Origin: Octopus sinensis
Lineage: Eukaryota
Assembly (NCBI RefSeq): GCF_006345805.1
Contig: NW_021832033.1
Location: 1-33,500, forward strand
Direction: 5' to 3'
DNA: 33,500 nt
A program made the translations under genes and the position numbers. The notes below the pieces were generated by a model, which worked only from the letters and a program-made list of their open reading frames with translations, was not told where the DNA came from and searched no databases. Shown piece after piece: positions 16,869 through 23,322 of the stretch (position 1 is the stretch's first letter; each line of letters starts with the position of its first letter).

Positions 16869-17126
16869 ATGAACCTACCTTTCATTAATTGGGCTTATTC
16901 ATTAACCAATCTTTATGATCTCAATCAGCAACAAATAATAACGATCCTCTCAACATGCTGTCTATCAGTGTGATTATATGAAAGCCTATCTTTGGATAAG
17001 CTTTCCGAGTTAATCAATGTTGTGTATGATAATTGTGTGGATTATATTGAAATGTCGAGAGATTTACAGCATTTGTCAGGTTAAGAACAGTTTCATCTCC
17101 AGCTTTATTCGTATCTGTGAATCCAG
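16869..17126 (+). CDS. Candidate first coding exon of the propeller gene
   Basis: The ATG at 16869 opens MNLPFINWAYSLTNLYDLNQQQIITILSTCCLSV*LYESLSLDKLSELINVVYDNCVDYIEMSRDLQHLSG, with one in-frame TGA at 16971. A +1 repair near 17081 continues LRTVSSPALFVSVNP to a CAG|GTAAAT donor at 17126/17127. The intron would be 689 bp. Confidence 0.45.
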
Positions 17127-17338
17127 GTAAATATGATGGAAACCAAGCCAACCATGACTGTCACATCATTTCCAGTGCATATAATTATTAATAATACTTA
17201 TATTCCTGATTTGTAGGGACGTGGTATTTCATTATGCAACCATAAATTCCTGTAAAATATATTAAATCGTTTTAGAAGTCAACACCACATTCTACTTTGT
17301 TAGCAGTGTTTTTCACATTATTCTATTGATATTCCATA

Positions 17339-17815: not shown

Positions 17816-20800
17816 CTTTCACGTAAAAATTAGTGAATTTTGAAGAGATAAAATGTATTCGAAAGGAAGAACAAAATCCACAGAAAAGAATATATTTAAC
17901 AGAAAAAGATAATAATTCTATATTCATAAAATGGAGAAGATTAATGAAGAAAACAAAATGTTGGCTCTCATTCCTGCCACAGTCTGTGATACAACAGCAA
18001 TTTATAAGGAAACTACACCAAATCTTACCCAAATATTACACACACAAAACACAAAGAAAACAGAAGAACAGGAAAGAAAAGACACAAAGAAATCTAAAGA
18101 ACAGGAAAAGTCCATGTTACCAAGTTTTCTTCATATTGTGACATGTTACCGAACACTAATCAAAACAGACCACATCAATACGTTTATAGATTATGTAAAG
18201 GATAAATGTAATCACATGGACTCTCTGGGTTTAAATGGATCTCGAATTTTACGTAATATCAAACGTAAAATGCCAAGATTTCTGGAATTTGCAAAACAAA
18301 ATAATGATTTTGTTCACCTAAACCTTGATTGGTTTCAACAAAGACTCTTTGACATTTATGTCACCTGTAACCCATACAACCACAAGACCATTGAACCACC
18401 AAAAGTAACCACAAAATTTCGTCCTCTTCGGCCAGTTGTGACCAGAGAAGTAGAGATTGAGGAATCTGGTGAAGACTTAAGCAACCCAATATCCAATATT
18501 GTTGTCATACAAGGGGGAATTGTAACATATTCCCGCCACTTTATGACAATATGTTGTGTAACAAGAGACGGCAACAGAAACGATGTTCGTTGCTCATCTT
18601 CTGTCACTGATTTTACCAGAATCAGTGAAGACACAGTCCTGGCCACCCTCCCATTTCGAAAGATGATTCTTATTATCAACCCTTTAAGTTTGGGAATCAA
18701 AAGAATTCAGCTAGGATTAATCTTGGTTTCTTATTTGGAACATTCTACGCTTATAGGTGTAGAAATGTTTGGTCAGACCATATACGTCATTGACTGGGAA
18801 GAGAATAGAATAAAATACGAATTCATAACGAAAGAAACCCCTTCAGATATTGCTGTAGGAGCACAAAATAAACTCTTAGTATCCTTTTCCAATATTAACA
18901 GGGTTACCTGTTACAATGTGGATGGCCAGCAATTATTTGAGGTGGATACCAATTCCCTGGACATTCCAAGCCACATCTCTGTGTACCAAAACCATTTTTA
19001 TGTCCTTCAGGGACATATTATTTATCGGATATCAGGTACAGGTGCTGTGACAACAAGAGGAATTGGCATGAAATGCCGCCATATTTCTGTTGGCAGAGAA
19101 AATATTTTTGTAACCGATTATTTTGATGTCCTTCATATCATTGGAACAAATGAAGACTTTTGGCCCAGGCAGTCACATAACCTCCAGCTATGGACCCCAA
19201 CATTGAACAGCTATATTTATATTGAGGATTGCTACAACATTACAAATATTCTACCTATGTCTACATCTTCTATATTAATAATTTACAAAAACAAGAAAGC
19301 TAAATTATTCACTGATAACGGGGAAATAATTAACCCAAAATAATTCAGTTTTCCTTGAGCTTCCTTCTTTCTGTTGTAGAATAAACGCAAACAGATTCCT
19401 GGTATTTTATTGTGAAATGAAAGGATTTCAGTATATCACCTGTCCTGAACTAAGAAAAGGCCCTTTAATAAAGGTGCAAACTGGTTACATGAAAAATGTC
19501 ATATTGTATCAAATAAGTGTCTGGCTGTGACCACCACTGAAAACAAAAGCGAGGTCCATATCTTATTGATCAACGAAGATAAAGTTGACATCGCAGAAAG
19601 AATTTCTCTGGGACATCATAATGTCAGCATTGCTGCAACTCCAATTAATTTTGTAGTCGTAGATGGAAACGAAAATAAAATGGTATTTTATTCCACATGT
19701 GGTGAAGAACTTTTTCAAAAATACCTTCCATTCTATGGCTACCCTCATCACATCTACTCTGATAATGTTTATTTCTATGTCCTCTTCAGGAGAAACTCTA
19801 TTCTCAGATGTTACGATCTATATGGACAAATGAAATGGCAGTGGGAACTGCCTTTCCCTGTTCACCCTCACATTGCTGTTTTCCAAGGAACTCTTTATGT
19901 CCCGGACACTCAACTCAACAGGGTTCTTCTTTACAAGTATCAAGACCGGTCGTCTGGCTGCCTTTTACCCATTAAAAATCCTTACATCAGAAATCTAAAT
20001 CTACGACTCAAAGAAAAGGAGAATGACCAAAAACTTGTCATTGGCGAAATATGTAATCTGTCCAATGGACAGTTGGTGGTGTCTGACATCAACCATGATT
20101 GCTTGTTGTACATTTCTGAGGAAGGAGACATTGTGTCCAGATTATCTCTGCCGTCTACAGCCACAGATATATGTCGATGGGATTCTAATCATATAGGGGT
20201 CACATTACCCCTACAGAAACAATTAAGGGTCATCGAAACCTATCAAAGACAGTGAGAAGTGTAAAATTAAGGCAGCCTTATGTACAGGTGTGTAAGATGG
20301 GTGAATGTGAAATTGTTTGTTATTGTGATAAACCATCACATTTAGACATTTTAGCCATCAATATTATAATCAAGTTGAAGTAATTAAGACAATTAATATC
20401 CCTGTGTTTGTGAAATCATTATCAGTAGACAAGGAAACAGAAAAGCTATTAATTGTTACTAGGGGAAAAGCTTTTCAGTACACACTAGAATAGGTGTGGT
20501 GGTCATGGCGTTTGTCAGATGGTCCCCAGTGTTTTAATGTCCCAAGTGAAACGTCCCCTCAGTCTCCAAGGTGGATCTATTGACCAAACGTCTGTTTTTC
20601 TGATAGACAGAAGCCGTATGTTTGCCATAAACGATCAGAATTTGTTGGTTAATGATCTCGTTACTAATAATCAACTTAATTATTATATCGACCTGGTGGA
20701 TGTATTTTCCAGACACATTTCTCTCAGTGAAATGTTGTCTTCCACTTTATATCTACAGGACCTGACAGTTTCTGATAAAGCCAGGCATATTCCTCTCCCT

Positions 20801-23322
20801 AAACATTTGGGAGACAAAGGACCAGCGGAGATTAGATCTTTGGTTCTTACTGAAAATAATCTGATTGCAGGATGTGACGAGGAGAATGGAAACATTAAGA
20901 TATTCACATTGGATGGTCAGCTTTTGGATTCAATCAAAGTGAATGTTTATTATAATATTAAAATGTGTCGATGGCAGTCAAACACACTGGTCATTACGAA
21001 CTGGGATCTTTCTAATAAACCCCAACTGTGGACATTAAAAGTGGAATTTCCATTGTCGTTGGTAATTTACCAAACGAGAAATAAATATTATTGTGTGGCT
21101 TCTTTATCAAATAATCAACTGGTTTTGAGTGAATGAGAGATGGAAGACATTTGCATTTTGTTGATATTGATGAAATACATTCGAGTGTGAAGGAAATAAA
21201 TAAAATAGACATACCTGAACCATTAATAAGAAGAGACGAAGATGGAAATTGTTCTGATATAATCCGGGATATTAAAGTTACTGATGAAGATGTCATCATT
21301 GTCTAAACTTGAGATTCATCATTTTCTTCAACAGTGGTGGTCAATATTTACATTCAGTCAGACACTACATGGAGGATTATTTTGGTATGATGACAGGATG
21401 ACAATTGATGACAGTTTTTTGTACATTTATGGTGAGTGGGAGAAATATTAGGTCCATCTGAATATCGAAACATTTTGTGTTTGACCCAGAATGGGGATAC
21501 AAGAGAATATTTTTAAATAAAGAATTTATAAAGATGAAGTAGAATTCTCCAGTATAGACTGTAAAGGACCAAGGTTTGTTGGAAGCCCCAATGGAGAGAG
21601 ATGAATTGATATGTATGTGAAGGGTTGTTTATGGTGAATCGAGACAGCTTCCCGGTTGCTCGTTTACAAACAGACGAATGTCCTGTTCAAGTAAAAGATT
21701 TTGATGTCTCTGAGGAAGGAAAGACAGTTGTGTGTGAAAAAGCCAATATGGAAATATTAAAAATATCGATGAAGATGGCCAGTTGCTATGTCACAGAAAT
21801 GTTGCAAGTTTAGTTGGTGGTGTGTGTTTTACACAAGAATCACACATAATGGTCACAGTTCCTAAAAGGAGAGAAATATTTCAACTGAATGGAGAAGATT
21901 TGAAGACATCTCAAGTTTGTCGAGTTCTCCCATGGCCCTTATGTGTAATAGGGAGAAAAGTGGCAGGTATTTACTGGTGTGTACATAATGAATTGATTGA
22001 ATGTCATTGCATAAAGATTGATGGGGACCAAGTGAACATTCTGGAATCTGTGTCGTCATTAAATCTTGATTCTGGTCTTCGTTTCCCTTCCATTACATCT
22101 GAAACGAACAAGGAAATATTCAGTAATGAATTAATTAATAAATTGGAATTCAGAGGAGGAGATGGAGATGGAGGAGGAAGAAGAAGAGGTAAATCAGGTG
22201 AAATAATTGGTAAAGGTAGATTAAAGGTGCGATGTGGTAATTACATAGCGGAGATTAATAATTCAGGAATTGATGAAATATCAGTGAGGAGACTTCCATA
22301 TAGGACAGCAATGGTCCCTTTTTCCATTCCTGCATTCGAGGAACCTGTTGATTATGATTTGATGGACATTAGGGACCGGAACAGTAAACTAATAAAGTTA
22401 GATGAGAATGTGAGTGTGTTGATGTTTCGAGAAAGTGTCACATTAATCAGAACAACAACAACAACAGTGGACATACTTCAACATGAACAACAACAACGAC
22501 CACCACTGGACATATGTCGGTGGACAGAGGAATGTTTCATTGTCGCCTTTGGAGAGAAATGAGGGTCTTCAACAGGGATCTCCGTCGTTTAAAAACCATC
22601 AGAACTGAGAAATACTACAACAGGATTTATAAATACACGACAATCAACTCGTGTGTGGTGGTCATTATATTAGAGACATAACTCAAGAAGAGAGACACAA
22701 GAAATACCAAAGAATATGGAAGAACAACAAGGATTATACTTTTTTGCAAAGACCTTGACATCTTTGACCCTTATTATGTGGATGTGGTTGATATCAAAGA
22801 TGGGAAATGTAAAGATGAATTGTGTCGTGGGGAGATGAGGAGATTGGGAAGGTTGGAGGGAGAGGAAGGGGTGTTGGATGGTGTGGGAGTCACATCTTTT
22901 GGTGATGTTGTTGTTTTGAGGAGGGAGATAAGGAAAAGGAGTGGTCTGGACGGTGGGAAGTTTTGTGTTTTGTGGAATGGTTCAGGGAAAAGTCTTTGGT
23001 GAGGAGGATAAGAATAGAAAAAGGAAGGTTTTATGGTCCGGAATATTATATTGCAAGACCTCGTCTGACCATAATTGGTGAATGTGTTTATATAACAGAT
23101 ACAAGAAACAATATTTACGAAATACCTGGACATATTGAAGAGGAAACATCTGAAGATGATGAAATCCGGGGATTAAAAGATAATCCAAAATATTTACTCC
23201 TCAGAGGGGATGATAATGAAGTCTCTGAAGTTCTTGGTTTGGATGTTTCAGACAATTCTTTGATGGTTTTTGGAATTATTCCTGGACGTCAATCTTTTGC
23301 TTTCTTTTATTTTGACAAATAA
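17816..23322 (+). CDS. Large (~5.5 kb) terminal exon encoding about six tandem NHL/SGL-like beta-propeller domains; frameshifted in this sequence
   Basis: Six to seven long + strand ORFs (17833, 17931, 19527, 20519, 21783, 22778, 22963) tile the region and join by +1-base repairs. Recurrent propeller-type motifs: TDICRWDSNHIGVTLP, KMCRWQSNTLVIT, LDICRWTEECFIVAF, TDFTRISEDTVLATLP, GQLVVSDINHDCL. Acceptor TTTTATTTCAG at 17805-17815 with CTAAT at 17790. Stop TAA at 23320-23322 overlaps AATAAA (23318-23323). Intact gene versus pseudogene is unresolved. Confidence 0.75.

What the first reader, a model, noticed from the sequence alone, without database searches (positions are those of the whole stretch)
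16869..23322. Uncharacterised ~1,900-aa protein with about six tandem beta-propellers, almost all in one exon
Seen: after joining frames, a first-blade motif (hydrophobic-x2-I-x2-L, then D-x2-N, then D/K-I/M-C-R-W or a variant) recurs near 18487, 19236, 20040, 20825, 21690 and 22385. The mean spacing of ~780 bp (~260 aa) is the size of a six-bladed propeller. In front is a ~220-aa charged/helical segment with no RING or B-box visible. Established: NHL-like propellers in molluscs usually occur once, at the C-terminus of TRIM-like proteins, in expanded families often linked to immunity or RNA binding. Inference: a multi-propeller, RING-less, nearly intronless paralogue, possibly a lineage-specific recognition scaffold.
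Basis: partly seen in the sequence, partly recalled or inferred. Interest (0 to 1): 0.7.

Follow-up and report, generated by a model that had tools for sequence, protein, structure and literature searches.

The report
Frameshifted octopus six-propeller gene copy
This stretch is one copy of an Octopus-only, intron-less gene family whose roughly 1,700-1,800-residue proteins appear to be six NHL-like beta-propellers in a row, but this copy is broken by 18 single-base frameshifts and is most likely a decaying pseudogene (or sits in a poorly polished part of the assembly).

Summary
A coding-like tract runs on the + strand from ATG 17931 to TAA 23320-23322. It can only be read by joining frames, and it has a unit of about 780 bp (about 260 aa) that recurs six times behind a charged/helical head of about 180 aa with no RING or B-box.

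It belongs to a family of at least 75 'uncharacterized' proteins, found here only in Octopus vulgaris, O. sinensis and O. bimaculoides. Intact paralogues are single uninterrupted ORFs of 1,662-1,717 codons under purifying selection (omega 0.40).

AlphaFold2 on the syntenic O. vulgaris copy gives two complete six-bladed propellers plus three blades of a third. Profile self-comparison links all six units. Unit profiles retrieve Brat/TRIM71/Thin NHL domains (best E 4e-4), although Pfam recognises nothing. The C-terminal 3.5 propellers are inferred, because the structure server failed.

The window copy is not an intact gene. It carries 18 one-base frameshifts and one stop, 16 of the 18 frameshifts in the 3' 60%, where omega is about 0.7-1. 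The syntenic O. vulgaris locus carries 11 different frameshifts. The likeliest reading is a decaying family member. Assembly error remains a serious rival, because the flanks show a 30:5 bias towards deletions in the window.

The parts
17017..17127 (+). Probable non-coding 5' exon (5'UTR), ending in the splice donor CAG|GTAAAT
   Evidence: 97% match to the first 37 aa-equivalents of an O. vulgaris gene model, P0012. Donor sequence read directly. In this copy the exon's ORF runs into stops after splicing, so it is probably UTR (inference). The block 16004-17206 is 84% conserved upstream of the intact O. bimaculoides gene.
17128..17815 (+). Probable 5'UTR intron, with acceptor TTTATTTCAG| at about 17815
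   Evidence: Donor at 17128 and a polypyrimidine/AG acceptor seen. No transcript data were available, so this is inferred.
17931..23322 (+). Whole coding-like tract of the family member. It has 18 one-base frameshifts, at 19335, 19495, 20235, 20360, 20482, 20496, 21134, 21301, 21387, 21446, 21496, 21519, 21602, 21748, 22554, 22637, 22738 and 22931. It has one in-frame stop at 21607 and the terminal TAA at 23320-23322.
   Evidence: Frameshift-aware alignment to the family consensus: 1,782 matched codons at 92.8% identity. Longest true ORF is 17931-19343, 470 aa.
17931..18476 (+). N-terminal K/E-rich and helical region (182 codons), with no RING or B-box
   Evidence: AF2 on P0001 gives four helices at low confidence, pLDDT below 56. 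No significant Pfam hit. omega is about 1 against the syntenic copy.
18477..19205 (+). Unit 1: six-bladed beta-propeller, reading frame intact
   Evidence: AF2 gives 23-24 strands at pLDDT 80-88. The U1 profile's top PDB hit is the Brat NHL domain at E 0.06. Lineage omega is 0.14 for codons 185-770.
19206..20024 (+). Unit 2: six-bladed beta-propeller. A +1 shift at 19335 and a -1 shift at 19495 put 53 codons out of frame, with a stop at 19341.
   Evidence: AF2 gives 23 strands at pLDDT about 75-88 in P0001. Frameshifts read directly.
20025..20815 (+). Unit 3: propeller with a variable Gly/Ser/Arg-rich insert; five frameshifts
   Evidence: The first three blades are modelled by AF2 in P0001. 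U3 against U6 gives hhalign probability 95%. The whole-family profile touches TRIM2/3 NHL domains sub-threshold at this unit's first blade.
20816..21672 (+). Unit 4: NHL-like propeller (inferred); seven frameshifts and one stop
   Evidence: The U4 profile hits the Brat NHL domain at E 4e-4, and TRIM71 and Thin at 0.007. All 12 hits are TRIM-NHL proteins. hhalign gives U2-U4 63%, U4-U5 78% and U4-U6 76%.
21673..22370 (+). Unit 5: NHL-like propeller (inferred); one frameshift, at 21748
   Evidence: The U5 profile hits the Brat NHL domain at E 0.005 across two blades. hhalign gives U4-U5 78%.
22371..23319 (+). Unit 6: propeller with inserted loops (inferred); four frameshifts. It ends ...FAFFYFDK as in intact paralogues.
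   Evidence: hhalign gives U3-U6 95% and U4-U6 76%. The C-terminus matches P0021, P0025 and others. AATAAA overlaps the stop codon.

Best explanation
The tract 17931-23322 (+) is a degenerating copy of an Octopus-restricted, tandemly clustered, single-coding-exon gene family.

Intact members encode soluble, probably intracellular proteins of about 1,660-1,870 aa. Each has an N-terminal helical region of about 180 aa, followed by six consecutive six-bladed, NHL-like beta-propellers. These appear to have arisen by duplication of a two-propeller module.

The likely mode of action is inferred, not shown. The protein would be a non-enzymatic binding scaffold whose propeller faces each offer a ligand site for protein or RNA, as in TRIM-NHL proteins. 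The helical head would serve for self-association or adaptor contacts. The family would diversify by birth-and-death evolution and gene conversion.

The window copy can no longer make that protein. At most a 470-aa fragment (head plus propeller 1) can be translated. The 5' part, up to about codon 770, is still conserved. The 3' 60% evolves nearly neutrally and has collected one-base indels.
For: Family membership:
- 64-96% identity and E = 0 to Octopus proteins.
- The locus is syntenic with O. vulgaris OX597841.1 at 96-98% nucleotide identity, flanks included.

The family is real and constrained:
- P0032, P0054 and P0053 are uninterrupted single ORFs of 1,662, 1,712 and 1,717 codons.
- The orthologue pair P0054/P0053 has dS 0.177 and omega 0.40.

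Architecture:
- AF2 gives two complete 24-strand propellers plus three blades, at pLDDT 75-88.
- Foldseek matches tandem-propeller proteins at E 1e-22 to 1e-15.
- Self-hhalign gives 756 in-register columns at a two-unit offset, E 7e-8, plus unit-to-unit hits.
- NHL-domain hits come from three separate units: E 4e-4, 0.005 and 0.06.
- There is no hydrophobic segment of transmembrane strength and no signal peptide.

Decay of this copy:
- 18 frameshifts and one stop.
- Only 2 of the 18 lie in the first 770 codons (p 0.005). The syntenic copy has 11 others, 1 of them in the first 770 (p 0.02).
- Lineage-specific omega is 0.14 and 0.11 in codons 185-770, against 0.69 and 0.78 in codons 770-1811.
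- Two paralogues in the same O. vulgaris assembly show 1 frameshift (1,800 codons) and 0 (1,270 codons), so 11 is not generic noise.
- The indel-to-mismatch ratio of the CDS (32/141) equals that of the non-coding flanks (12/47 and 44/104).

Mode of duplication: similarity to a paralogue extends at least 3 kb upstream, which indicates segmental duplication. Mosaic identity between copies indicates gene conversion.
Against: - None of the window's 18 frameshifts is shared with the syntenic O. vulgaris copy. This is odd for an old pseudogene.
- 16 of the 18 are 1-bp deletions. The non-coding flanks show the same bias: 30 one-base gaps in the window against 5 in L002 (p 2e-5). That rate predicts 16.8 spurious deletions in a CDS of this length, which is what is seen. 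Many breaks could therefore be technical.
- There is only one in-frame stop, next to a frameshift. None of about 75 window-specific substitutions creates a stop.
- Gene conversion confounds the omega estimates.
- The fold of units 3b-6 was not modelled, because the structure server was down from then on.
- The NHL matches are weak, and Pfam's NHL model finds nothing.
- No expression, ligand or localisation data exist. The mechanism is inference from the fold alone.
Confidence: 0.6

Rival explanations
1. The gene is intact and functional in the animal. The 18 frame breaks are uncorrected long-read errors in a paralogue-rich region where short-read polishing fails.
For: - 16 of the 18 breaks are 1-bp deletions.
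- One-base gaps in the non-coding flanks are 30:5 biased towards 'missing in the window' (p 2e-5). That rate predicts 16.8 deletions in the CDS.
- No break is shared with the syntenic copy.
- Only one stop codon is present, and the translated sequence is 92.8% identical to the family consensus.
- The comparison assembly is itself ONT R9.4.1 with a single HyPo polish (PMC10700109).
Against: - The breaks are not uniformly spread. 2 of 18 fall in the first 43% of the CDS (p 0.005), and only 1-2 deletions are seen there where 7.2 are expected (p 0.006-0.026).
- The 3' part also has raised dN with unchanged dS. Indel errors cannot produce that pattern.
- The deleted bases lie mostly in runs of only 1-2 bases, not in long homopolymers.
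- The syntenic copy is likewise broken, while its neighbours in the same assembly are clean.
Confidence: 0.27
2. A truncated but still functional gene. Selection keeps only the 5' part (helical head plus propellers 1-2), and the 3' four propellers are a discarded relic.
For: - omega is 0.11-0.17 for codons 185-770 in both lineages, against about 0.7-1 downstream.
- Both syntenic copies are almost free of frameshifts up to codon 770-835.
- O. vulgaris annotators called an 827-aa ORF at the syntenic locus.
Against: - In the window the +1 shift at 19335 already truncates the ORF at 470 aa, inside propeller 2.
- The first truncating lesions differ between the two copies (codon 771 against 835).
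- Conservation of the 5' part can equally come from gene conversion by intact paralogues, which are 96% identical there.
- A propeller cut mid-domain is unlikely to fold.
Confidence: 0.1
3. The tract is several separate small genes, or one gene with many short introns, rather than one large exon.
For: Public annotation of the syntenic O. vulgaris locus splits it into products of 827, 121 and 477 aa. Several O. vulgaris models of paralogues contain annotator-called introns.
Against: - Every frame change is a 1-bp shift with overlapping reading frames, which leaves no room for introns.
- Intact paralogues in O. bimaculoides and O. sinensis are continuous ORFs collinear with the whole tract.
Confidence: 0.02
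4. The ORF belongs to a transposable element, or is a processed retrocopy, which would explain the many intron-less copies.
For: The gene is multi-copy and has an intron-less CDS. A Merlin-type transposase ORF lies 3.7 kb downstream.
Against: - No reverse transcriptase, integrase or transposase domain lies in or next to the ORF.
- Paralogue similarity extends at least 3 kb upstream, through a probable promoter, 5' exon and intron. That pattern fits segmental duplication.
- Intact copies are under purifying selection between species at syntenic positions.
- No poly(A) tract was noticed in the roughly 280 bp read after the stop. No dedicated search for target-site duplications or terminal repeats was made.
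Confidence: 0.01

Closest known systems
Octopus 'uncharacterized protein' family (e.g. O. bimaculoides LOC106873774 / LOC106873529 / LOC128251161, O. sinensis LOC115226324 / LOC115226288)
   Same: Direct homologues at 45-96% identity over the full length, with the same head plus six units and the same C-terminal ...FAFF(Y/H)(F/Y)(D/E)(K/R) ending. They have a single coding exon and cluster mainly on one small chromosome per species.
   Different: Those members are intact ORFs. The window copy carries 18 frameshifts and one stop. None of them has a described function or a Pfam domain.
TRIM-NHL proteins (Drosophila Brat and Thin, TRIM71/LIN-41, TRIM2, TRIM3)
   Same: Both have six-bladed propellers with blades of about 40 aa and an NHL-type blade signature (hydrophobic strand, D-x-x-N, hydrophobic strand, D/N-G). 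Unit profiles retrieve these NHL domains as top hits: E 4e-4 for U4, 0.005 for U5 and 0.06 for U1.
   Different: [quoted passage not shown] This family has six propellers and none of those domains. Pfam's NHL model does not score. RNA binding or E3-ligase partnership is untested. One model that fuses Ank and RING exons to a family copy spans a 44-kb 'intron' and may be a chimera.
LDL-receptor-related proteins with arrays of YWTD six-bladed propellers (LRP4/5/6 with four; LRP1/LRP2 with eight, from my own knowledge)
   Same: Several six-bladed propellers lie on one chain. LRP2, LRP4 and LRP6 appear among the Foldseek and profile hits.
   Different: LRPs are secreted or membrane proteins, with EGF modules between the propellers, a signal peptide and a transmembrane helix. 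This family has none of these. Its propellers abut directly.
Tandem WD40/TAPE propeller proteins (IFT-A subunits, Utp21/Pwp2; axonemal doublet-microtubule chains, which I take to be EML-type WD proteins, from my own knowledge; EML5/6 with three TAPE units, from my own knowledge)
   Same: These are the best Foldseek matches to the multi-domain model, at E 5e-22 to 1e-16. They are cytosolic chains of abutting propellers used as interaction scaffolds.
   Different: They are seven-bladed WD40 propellers, against six blades of about 40 aa here. There is no WD40 Pfam signal. TM-scores are only 0.15-0.25, because only the generic propeller fold is shared.

Membership tests
Octopus-specific hexa-propeller family (LOC106873774-like) | Full-length collinear homology to family members | tested here: met
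   The consensus aligns across 17931-23319 with 1,782 codons at 92.8% identity. phmmer gives E = 0 to 55 or more members.
Octopus-specific hexa-propeller family (LOC106873774-like) | Uninterrupted single-exon ORF of about 1,660-1,870 codons | tested here: not met
   The window has 18 frameshifts and one stop, and its longest ORF is 470 aa. Intact members are single ORFs. The window is therefore a broken member (pseudogene or mis-assembly).
NHL-repeat propellers (Pfam PF01436; TRIM-NHL type) | Match to the curated NHL repeat model | tested here: not met
   No Pfam hit at E up to 5 for window pieces or six full-length members.
NHL-repeat propellers (Pfam PF01436; TRIM-NHL type) | Sequence-profile similarity to solved NHL domains | tested here: inconclusive
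   U4 hits Brat at E 4e-4, and TRIM71 and Thin at 0.007. U5 hits Brat at 0.005 and U1 at 0.06. U2, U3 and U6 give no NHL hit. The direction is consistent, but the scores are built from weak blade-level matches.
NHL-repeat propellers (Pfam PF01436; TRIM-NHL type) | Six blades of four antiparallel strands, about 40-45 aa each | tested here: met
   The AF2 model of P0001 has 23-24 strands in residues 184-425 and 23 in 432-664, at pLDDT 75-88. This was shown for units 1-2 and half of unit 3 only.
TRIM (tripartite motif) proteins | [quoted passage not shown] | tested here: not met
   No zinc-finger Pfam hit and no CxxC pairs in the 182-aa head. AF2 gives four short helices at low confidence.
YWTD / LDL-receptor class B propeller arrays | Ldl_recept_b repeats with flanking EGF modules, a signal peptide and a membrane anchor | tested here: not met
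   No Pfam hit. Maximum Kyte-Doolittle 19-residue mean is 1.3-1.5 in six of seven sequences tested; the exception is P0072 at 2.19, which I take to lie in a beta-strand region, not a TM helix. N-termini are mostly charged and show no signal-peptide-like stretch. Only sub-threshold LRP hits, E 0.1-1.
WD40 repeat propellers | WD40 repeat signature and (usually) seven blades | tested here: not met
   No WD40 Pfam hit passes threshold; the only one is WD40_CFAP43 at E 0.06, below the cut-off. The model has six blades per unit. The Foldseek hits reflect the generic fold.
Processed (retroposed) pseudogene | Homology that stops at the transcript ends, a poly(A) tail, and loss of introns relative to the parent | tested here: not met
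   Similarity to paralogues continues at least 3 kb upstream, through a putative 5' exon and intron. The parents themselves have an intron-less CDS.

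The most novel reading that the evidence does not exclude
Octopuses carry a genus- or family-restricted repertoire of dozens of intron-less genes, clustered on one small chromosome. Each would encode a cytosolic chain of six NHL-like propellers behind an exchangeable helical head. The repertoire would diversify by duplication, gene conversion and pseudogenisation (intact-member omega 0.4). 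That pattern would fit a previously unrecognised intracellular recognition system, for example sensing of viral or transposon RNA or protein, derived from the NHL propeller of a TRIM-like ancestor. The window would capture one member at the 'death' stage of that cycle.
Probability: 0.15. Interest if true: 0.7.

Novelty: new variant of a known kind. Interest (0 to 1): 0.45.

Why it matters
Lineage-specific gene expansions are a central theme in cephalopod genomics; protocadherins, C2H2 zinc fingers and GPCRs are the known examples. This family is large, with at least 75 distinct proteins in three Octopus species. It has no name and no Pfam domain, and no paper in the searched library mentions the six gene identifiers I searched for.

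A chain of six abutting NHL-like propellers with no other recognisable domain is an unusual architecture. Known NHL proteins carry one propeller. If intact members prove to be expressed, the family offers an accessible case of how a binding fold is multiplied and diversified in one lineage.

For genome annotation the practical lesson is narrower. This locus and its O. vulgaris counterpart are split into spurious short gene models. The cluster needs read-level validation before copies are called genes or pseudogenes.

Tried and rejected
1. Pfam scans of every ORF piece and of six full-length members returned nothing significant.
2. Whole-protein profiles against PDB sequences gave only sub-threshold hits. 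Single-unit profiles were needed to reach the NHL domains.
I modelled the syntenic O. vulgaris product P0001 instead.
4. The model of the C-terminal half (P0038, alignment A3) was lost once and the server then stopped answering. Units 3b-6 therefore have no model.
The restriction to Octopus therefore rests only on word-prefiltered searches.
6. A crude count of strands from hydrophobic segments recovered only half of the AF2 strands in units 1-2, so I dropped it.
7. An exact-sequence look-up of the 470-aa ORF in public assemblies found nothing.
8. Literature searches for six gene identifiers of the family found nothing. A general search on octopus lineage-specific expansions also gave nothing relevant.
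9. The Ank-RING-propeller model P0062 was considered as evidence for a RING-bearing ancestor. I set it aside because it bridges a 44-kb gap and skips parts of the family copy.
10. TE or retrocopy origin was considered and rejected.
11. Rfam and tRNA scans of the window were empty.

Full report
**What is in the window**

The window is octopus DNA. It is AT-rich and full of microsatellites. The + strand between 17931 and 23322 holds a run of open segments in alternating frames. The longest true ORF is 17931-19343 (470 aa).

I built a consensus from 16 family proteins and aligned it to the DNA with a frameshift-aware dynamic programme. The alignment is continuous from the ATG at 17931 to the codon before the TAA at 23320-23322. 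It has 1,782 matched codons at 92.8% identity. It needs 18 frame changes, of which 16 are one-base deletions and 2 are one-base insertions. There is one in-frame stop, at 21607.

Reading the junctions base by base shows overlapping frames with no room for introns. The joins are indels, not splice sites.

Upstream of 17931 there is no homologous coding sequence. The only match is a 111-bp block at 17017-17127, which corresponds to the first exon of an O. vulgaris gene model. It ends in CAG|GTAAAT, and a good acceptor lies at about 17815. This is probably a 5'UTR exon and intron. That fits 'almost all in one exon', but the start at 16869 and the figure of about 1,900 aa are overestimates.

**The repeat**

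The C-R-W-type motif recurs 42-49 codons after each unit start, with a mean spacing of 781 bp.

Profile-profile comparison of the units gives in-register matches:
- U3-U6: 95%
- U4-U5: 78%
- U4-U6: 76%
- U2-U4: 63%
- U1-U3: 44%

A self-comparison of the whole family alignment aligns residues 741-1724 with 222-1167 over 756 columns (94.6%, E 7e-8). It also aligns 453-1167 with 986-1724. The strongest signal is at a two-unit offset, which suggests growth by duplication of a two-propeller module. The repeat is real and old, since the units share under 20% identity.

**The family**

Three protein searches returned 75 distinct proteins, all from O. vulgaris, O. sinensis and O. bimaculoides. All are named 'uncharacterized' or 'hypothetical', and essentially none has a Pfam domain.

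Full-length members are 1,572-1,870 aa. Most lie on one small chromosome or scaffold per species: 29.2 Mb, 15.1 Mb and 18.6 Mb.

Three intact members were checked at DNA level. P0032 and P0054 (O. bimaculoides) and P0053 (O. sinensis) are single uninterrupted ORFs of 1,662, 1,712 and 1,717 codons. The orthologue pair P0054/P0053 has dS 0.177, dN 0.071 and omega 0.40. A 5-kb ORF kept open over that distance is functional, though it evolves fairly fast.

Similarity between paralogous loci extends at least 3 kb upstream of the ATG and about 300 bp downstream. The family therefore spreads by segmental duplication, not retroposition. Identity along the CDS is mosaic. For example, L002 and L004 are 99.7% identical in codons 1300-1400, where the window and L002 are only 93.7% identical. 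This indicates gene conversion.

The restriction to Octopus is provisional. The searches use a word prefilter, and my exhaustive search failed.

**Fold**

The repaired window protein could not be submitted. I therefore modelled P0001, the 827-aa product of the syntenic O. vulgaris locus, which is 96% identical to the window's first half. The input was a 38-sequence family alignment. The model shows:
- Residues 1-180: low confidence, with four short helices.
- Residues 184-425: 23-24 beta-strands.
- Residues 432-664: 23 strands.
- Residues 699-818: 12 strands before the protein ends.

pLDDT is mostly 75-88 in the strand regions. That makes two complete propellers of six four-stranded blades of about 40 aa, plus three blades of a third.

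Foldseek against the PDB matches tandem-propeller proteins at E 5e-22 to 1e-15. These include IFT-A subunits, Utp21, axonemal doublet-microtubule chains, LRP2, LRP4 and BT4673. The hits confirm the fold class but not the subtype.

Pfam recognises nothing. Single-unit profiles searched against PDB sequences do find NHL domains:
- U4: Brat NHL at E 4e-4, TRIM71 at 0.007, Thin at 0.007. All 12 listed hits are TRIM-NHL proteins.
- U5: Brat at E 0.005 over two blades.
- U1: Brat at E 0.06, followed by LRP YWTD propellers.
- U2: a borderline hit to an unrelated-looking entry only.
- U3 and U6: nothing.

Together with the six-blade geometry, this makes 'NHL-like' a reasonable description. It does not establish membership of the NHL family.

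Units 3b-6 are propellers by inference from the internal homology and the NHL hits. The second model could not be obtained, because the server was down.

In six of the seven sequences tested no segment has transmembrane-grade hydrophobicity; the exception, P0072, has one peak that I take to lie in a beta-strand region. The N-termini are mostly charged and show no signal-peptide-like stretch. The proteins are probably soluble and intracellular.

**Is this copy alive?**

The window is syntenic with O. vulgaris OX597841.1:9.256-9.278 Mb (locus L002). Nucleotide identity is 96-98% through 15 kb, including non-coding flanks. L002 has 11 frameshifts and no stop, at entirely different positions.

In both copies the breaks avoid the first 770 codons: 2 of 18 in the window (p 0.005) and 1 of 11 in L002 (p 0.02).

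I polarised substitutions using a paralogue as outgroup. They give omega 0.14 and 0.11 in codons 185-770, and 0.69 and 0.78 downstream. Pairwise omega is 0.17 against about 1.0, with equal dS.

The indel-to-mismatch ratio of the CDS equals that of the flanks. In the same O. vulgaris assembly, a paralogue has 1 frameshift in 1,800 codons and its neighbour has 0 in 1,270. Eleven breaks in L002 is therefore not background noise.

These points favour real decay of the 3' 60% of the gene in both lineages. The 5' part would be kept either by selection or by conversion from intact neighbours.

Four points argue against this reading:
- No lesion is shared between the two copies.
- 16 of the window's 18 breaks are deletions. 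One-base gaps in the non-coding flanks are 30:5 biased the same way (p 2e-5), at a rate that predicts 16.8 deletions in the CDS.
- There is essentially no nonsense substitution.
- The O. vulgaris reference is an ONT R9.4.1 assembly polished once (PMC10700109). The window's sequencing technology is unknown.

My estimates are about 0.6 for genuine decay, about 0.27 for an intact gene obscured by assembly error, and about 0.1 for a truncated but functional 5' gene. Read-level data would settle this at once.

**How it most likely works (inferred)**

Intact members look like non-enzymatic scaffolds. Six propellers offer up to six ligand-binding faces, behind a helical head that differs between subfamilies. 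At least three head types can be seen.

By analogy with TRIM-NHL propellers, which bind RNA or proteins on their top face (established knowledge for Brat and LIN-41), the units may bind RNA or protein targets. Three features fit families engaged in recognition of variable targets: tandem clustering, omega of about 0.4, gene conversion, and frequent broken copies. Nothing here tests that idea.

The window copy itself is most probably inert.

**Verdict**

The object is a probably dead member of a real, undescribed, Octopus-restricted hexa-propeller family. This is a new variant of a known kind (NHL-type propeller proteins), of moderate interest.

Noticed in passing
window 27042-27965 (-), with arrays 25558-27055 and 28722-32483: An intact 307-aa ORF carries an ISXO2-like DDE transposase domain (PF12762, E 1e-20), i.e. 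Merlin-type. It is flanked by 316-bp tandem arrays of 4.8 and 11.9 copies. By eye, the repeat unit on the + strand appears to translate to the C-terminal end of the same transposase, so the satellite seems to have been born from a transposon 3' end.
   Followed up: partly
window 23741-24445: Long imperfect trinucleotide arrays (CGT-type and TCA-type, about 700 bp) begin about 420 bp after the gene's stop codon. They create spurious ORFs of 235-309 aa on both strands.
   Followed up: no
L006 6001-10884 and 54697-59545 (O. vulgaris CATOCA020000001.1): Gene model P0062 joins ankyrin and RING (zf-C3HC4_3) exons to a family copy 44 kb downstream. That copy starts at the conserved KFRPL linker (consensus aa 160) and lacks the helical head. 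It is either an annotation chimera or a hint of a RING-bearing relative.
   Followed up: partly
window 8935-17930 versus L002 1068-9987: One-base gaps in the non-coding flanks are strongly asymmetric: 30 are missing in the window and 5 in O. vulgaris (p 2e-5). This suggests that the window's assembly is prone to deletions, at about 3 per kb.
   Followed up: partly
window 21800-22100 (consensus codons 1300-1400) and L002 / L004: Identity among paralogues is mosaic. L002 and L004 are 99.7% identical in codons 1300-1400, where the window and L002 are 93.7% identical. In codons 300-500 the window and L002 are 98-99% identical, and each is only 74-79% identical to L004. This indicates gene-conversion tracts within the cluster.
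   Followed up: partly
window 16004-17206: This block is 84% identical to the region 0.6-2 kb upstream of the intact O. bimaculoides gene in L001. It is a candidate conserved promoter and 5'UTR of the family.
   Followed up: no
L004 15130-16309 and 20426-21804: The last roughly 240 bp of the CDS plus about 200 bp of 3' flank (window 23082-23521) occur several times, in both orientations, around the O. vulgaris paralogue. These look like partial duplications of the gene's 3' end.
   Followed up: no
family alignment, inside unit 3 (window about 20482-20520): A hypervariable low-complexity insert varies in length and composition among paralogues: GGGGHG in the window, poly-Ser/Arg in P0053 and P0054, and repeats of up to about 100 aa in P0023. 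The window lacks 222 bp and 36 bp that are present in L002.
   Followed up: no
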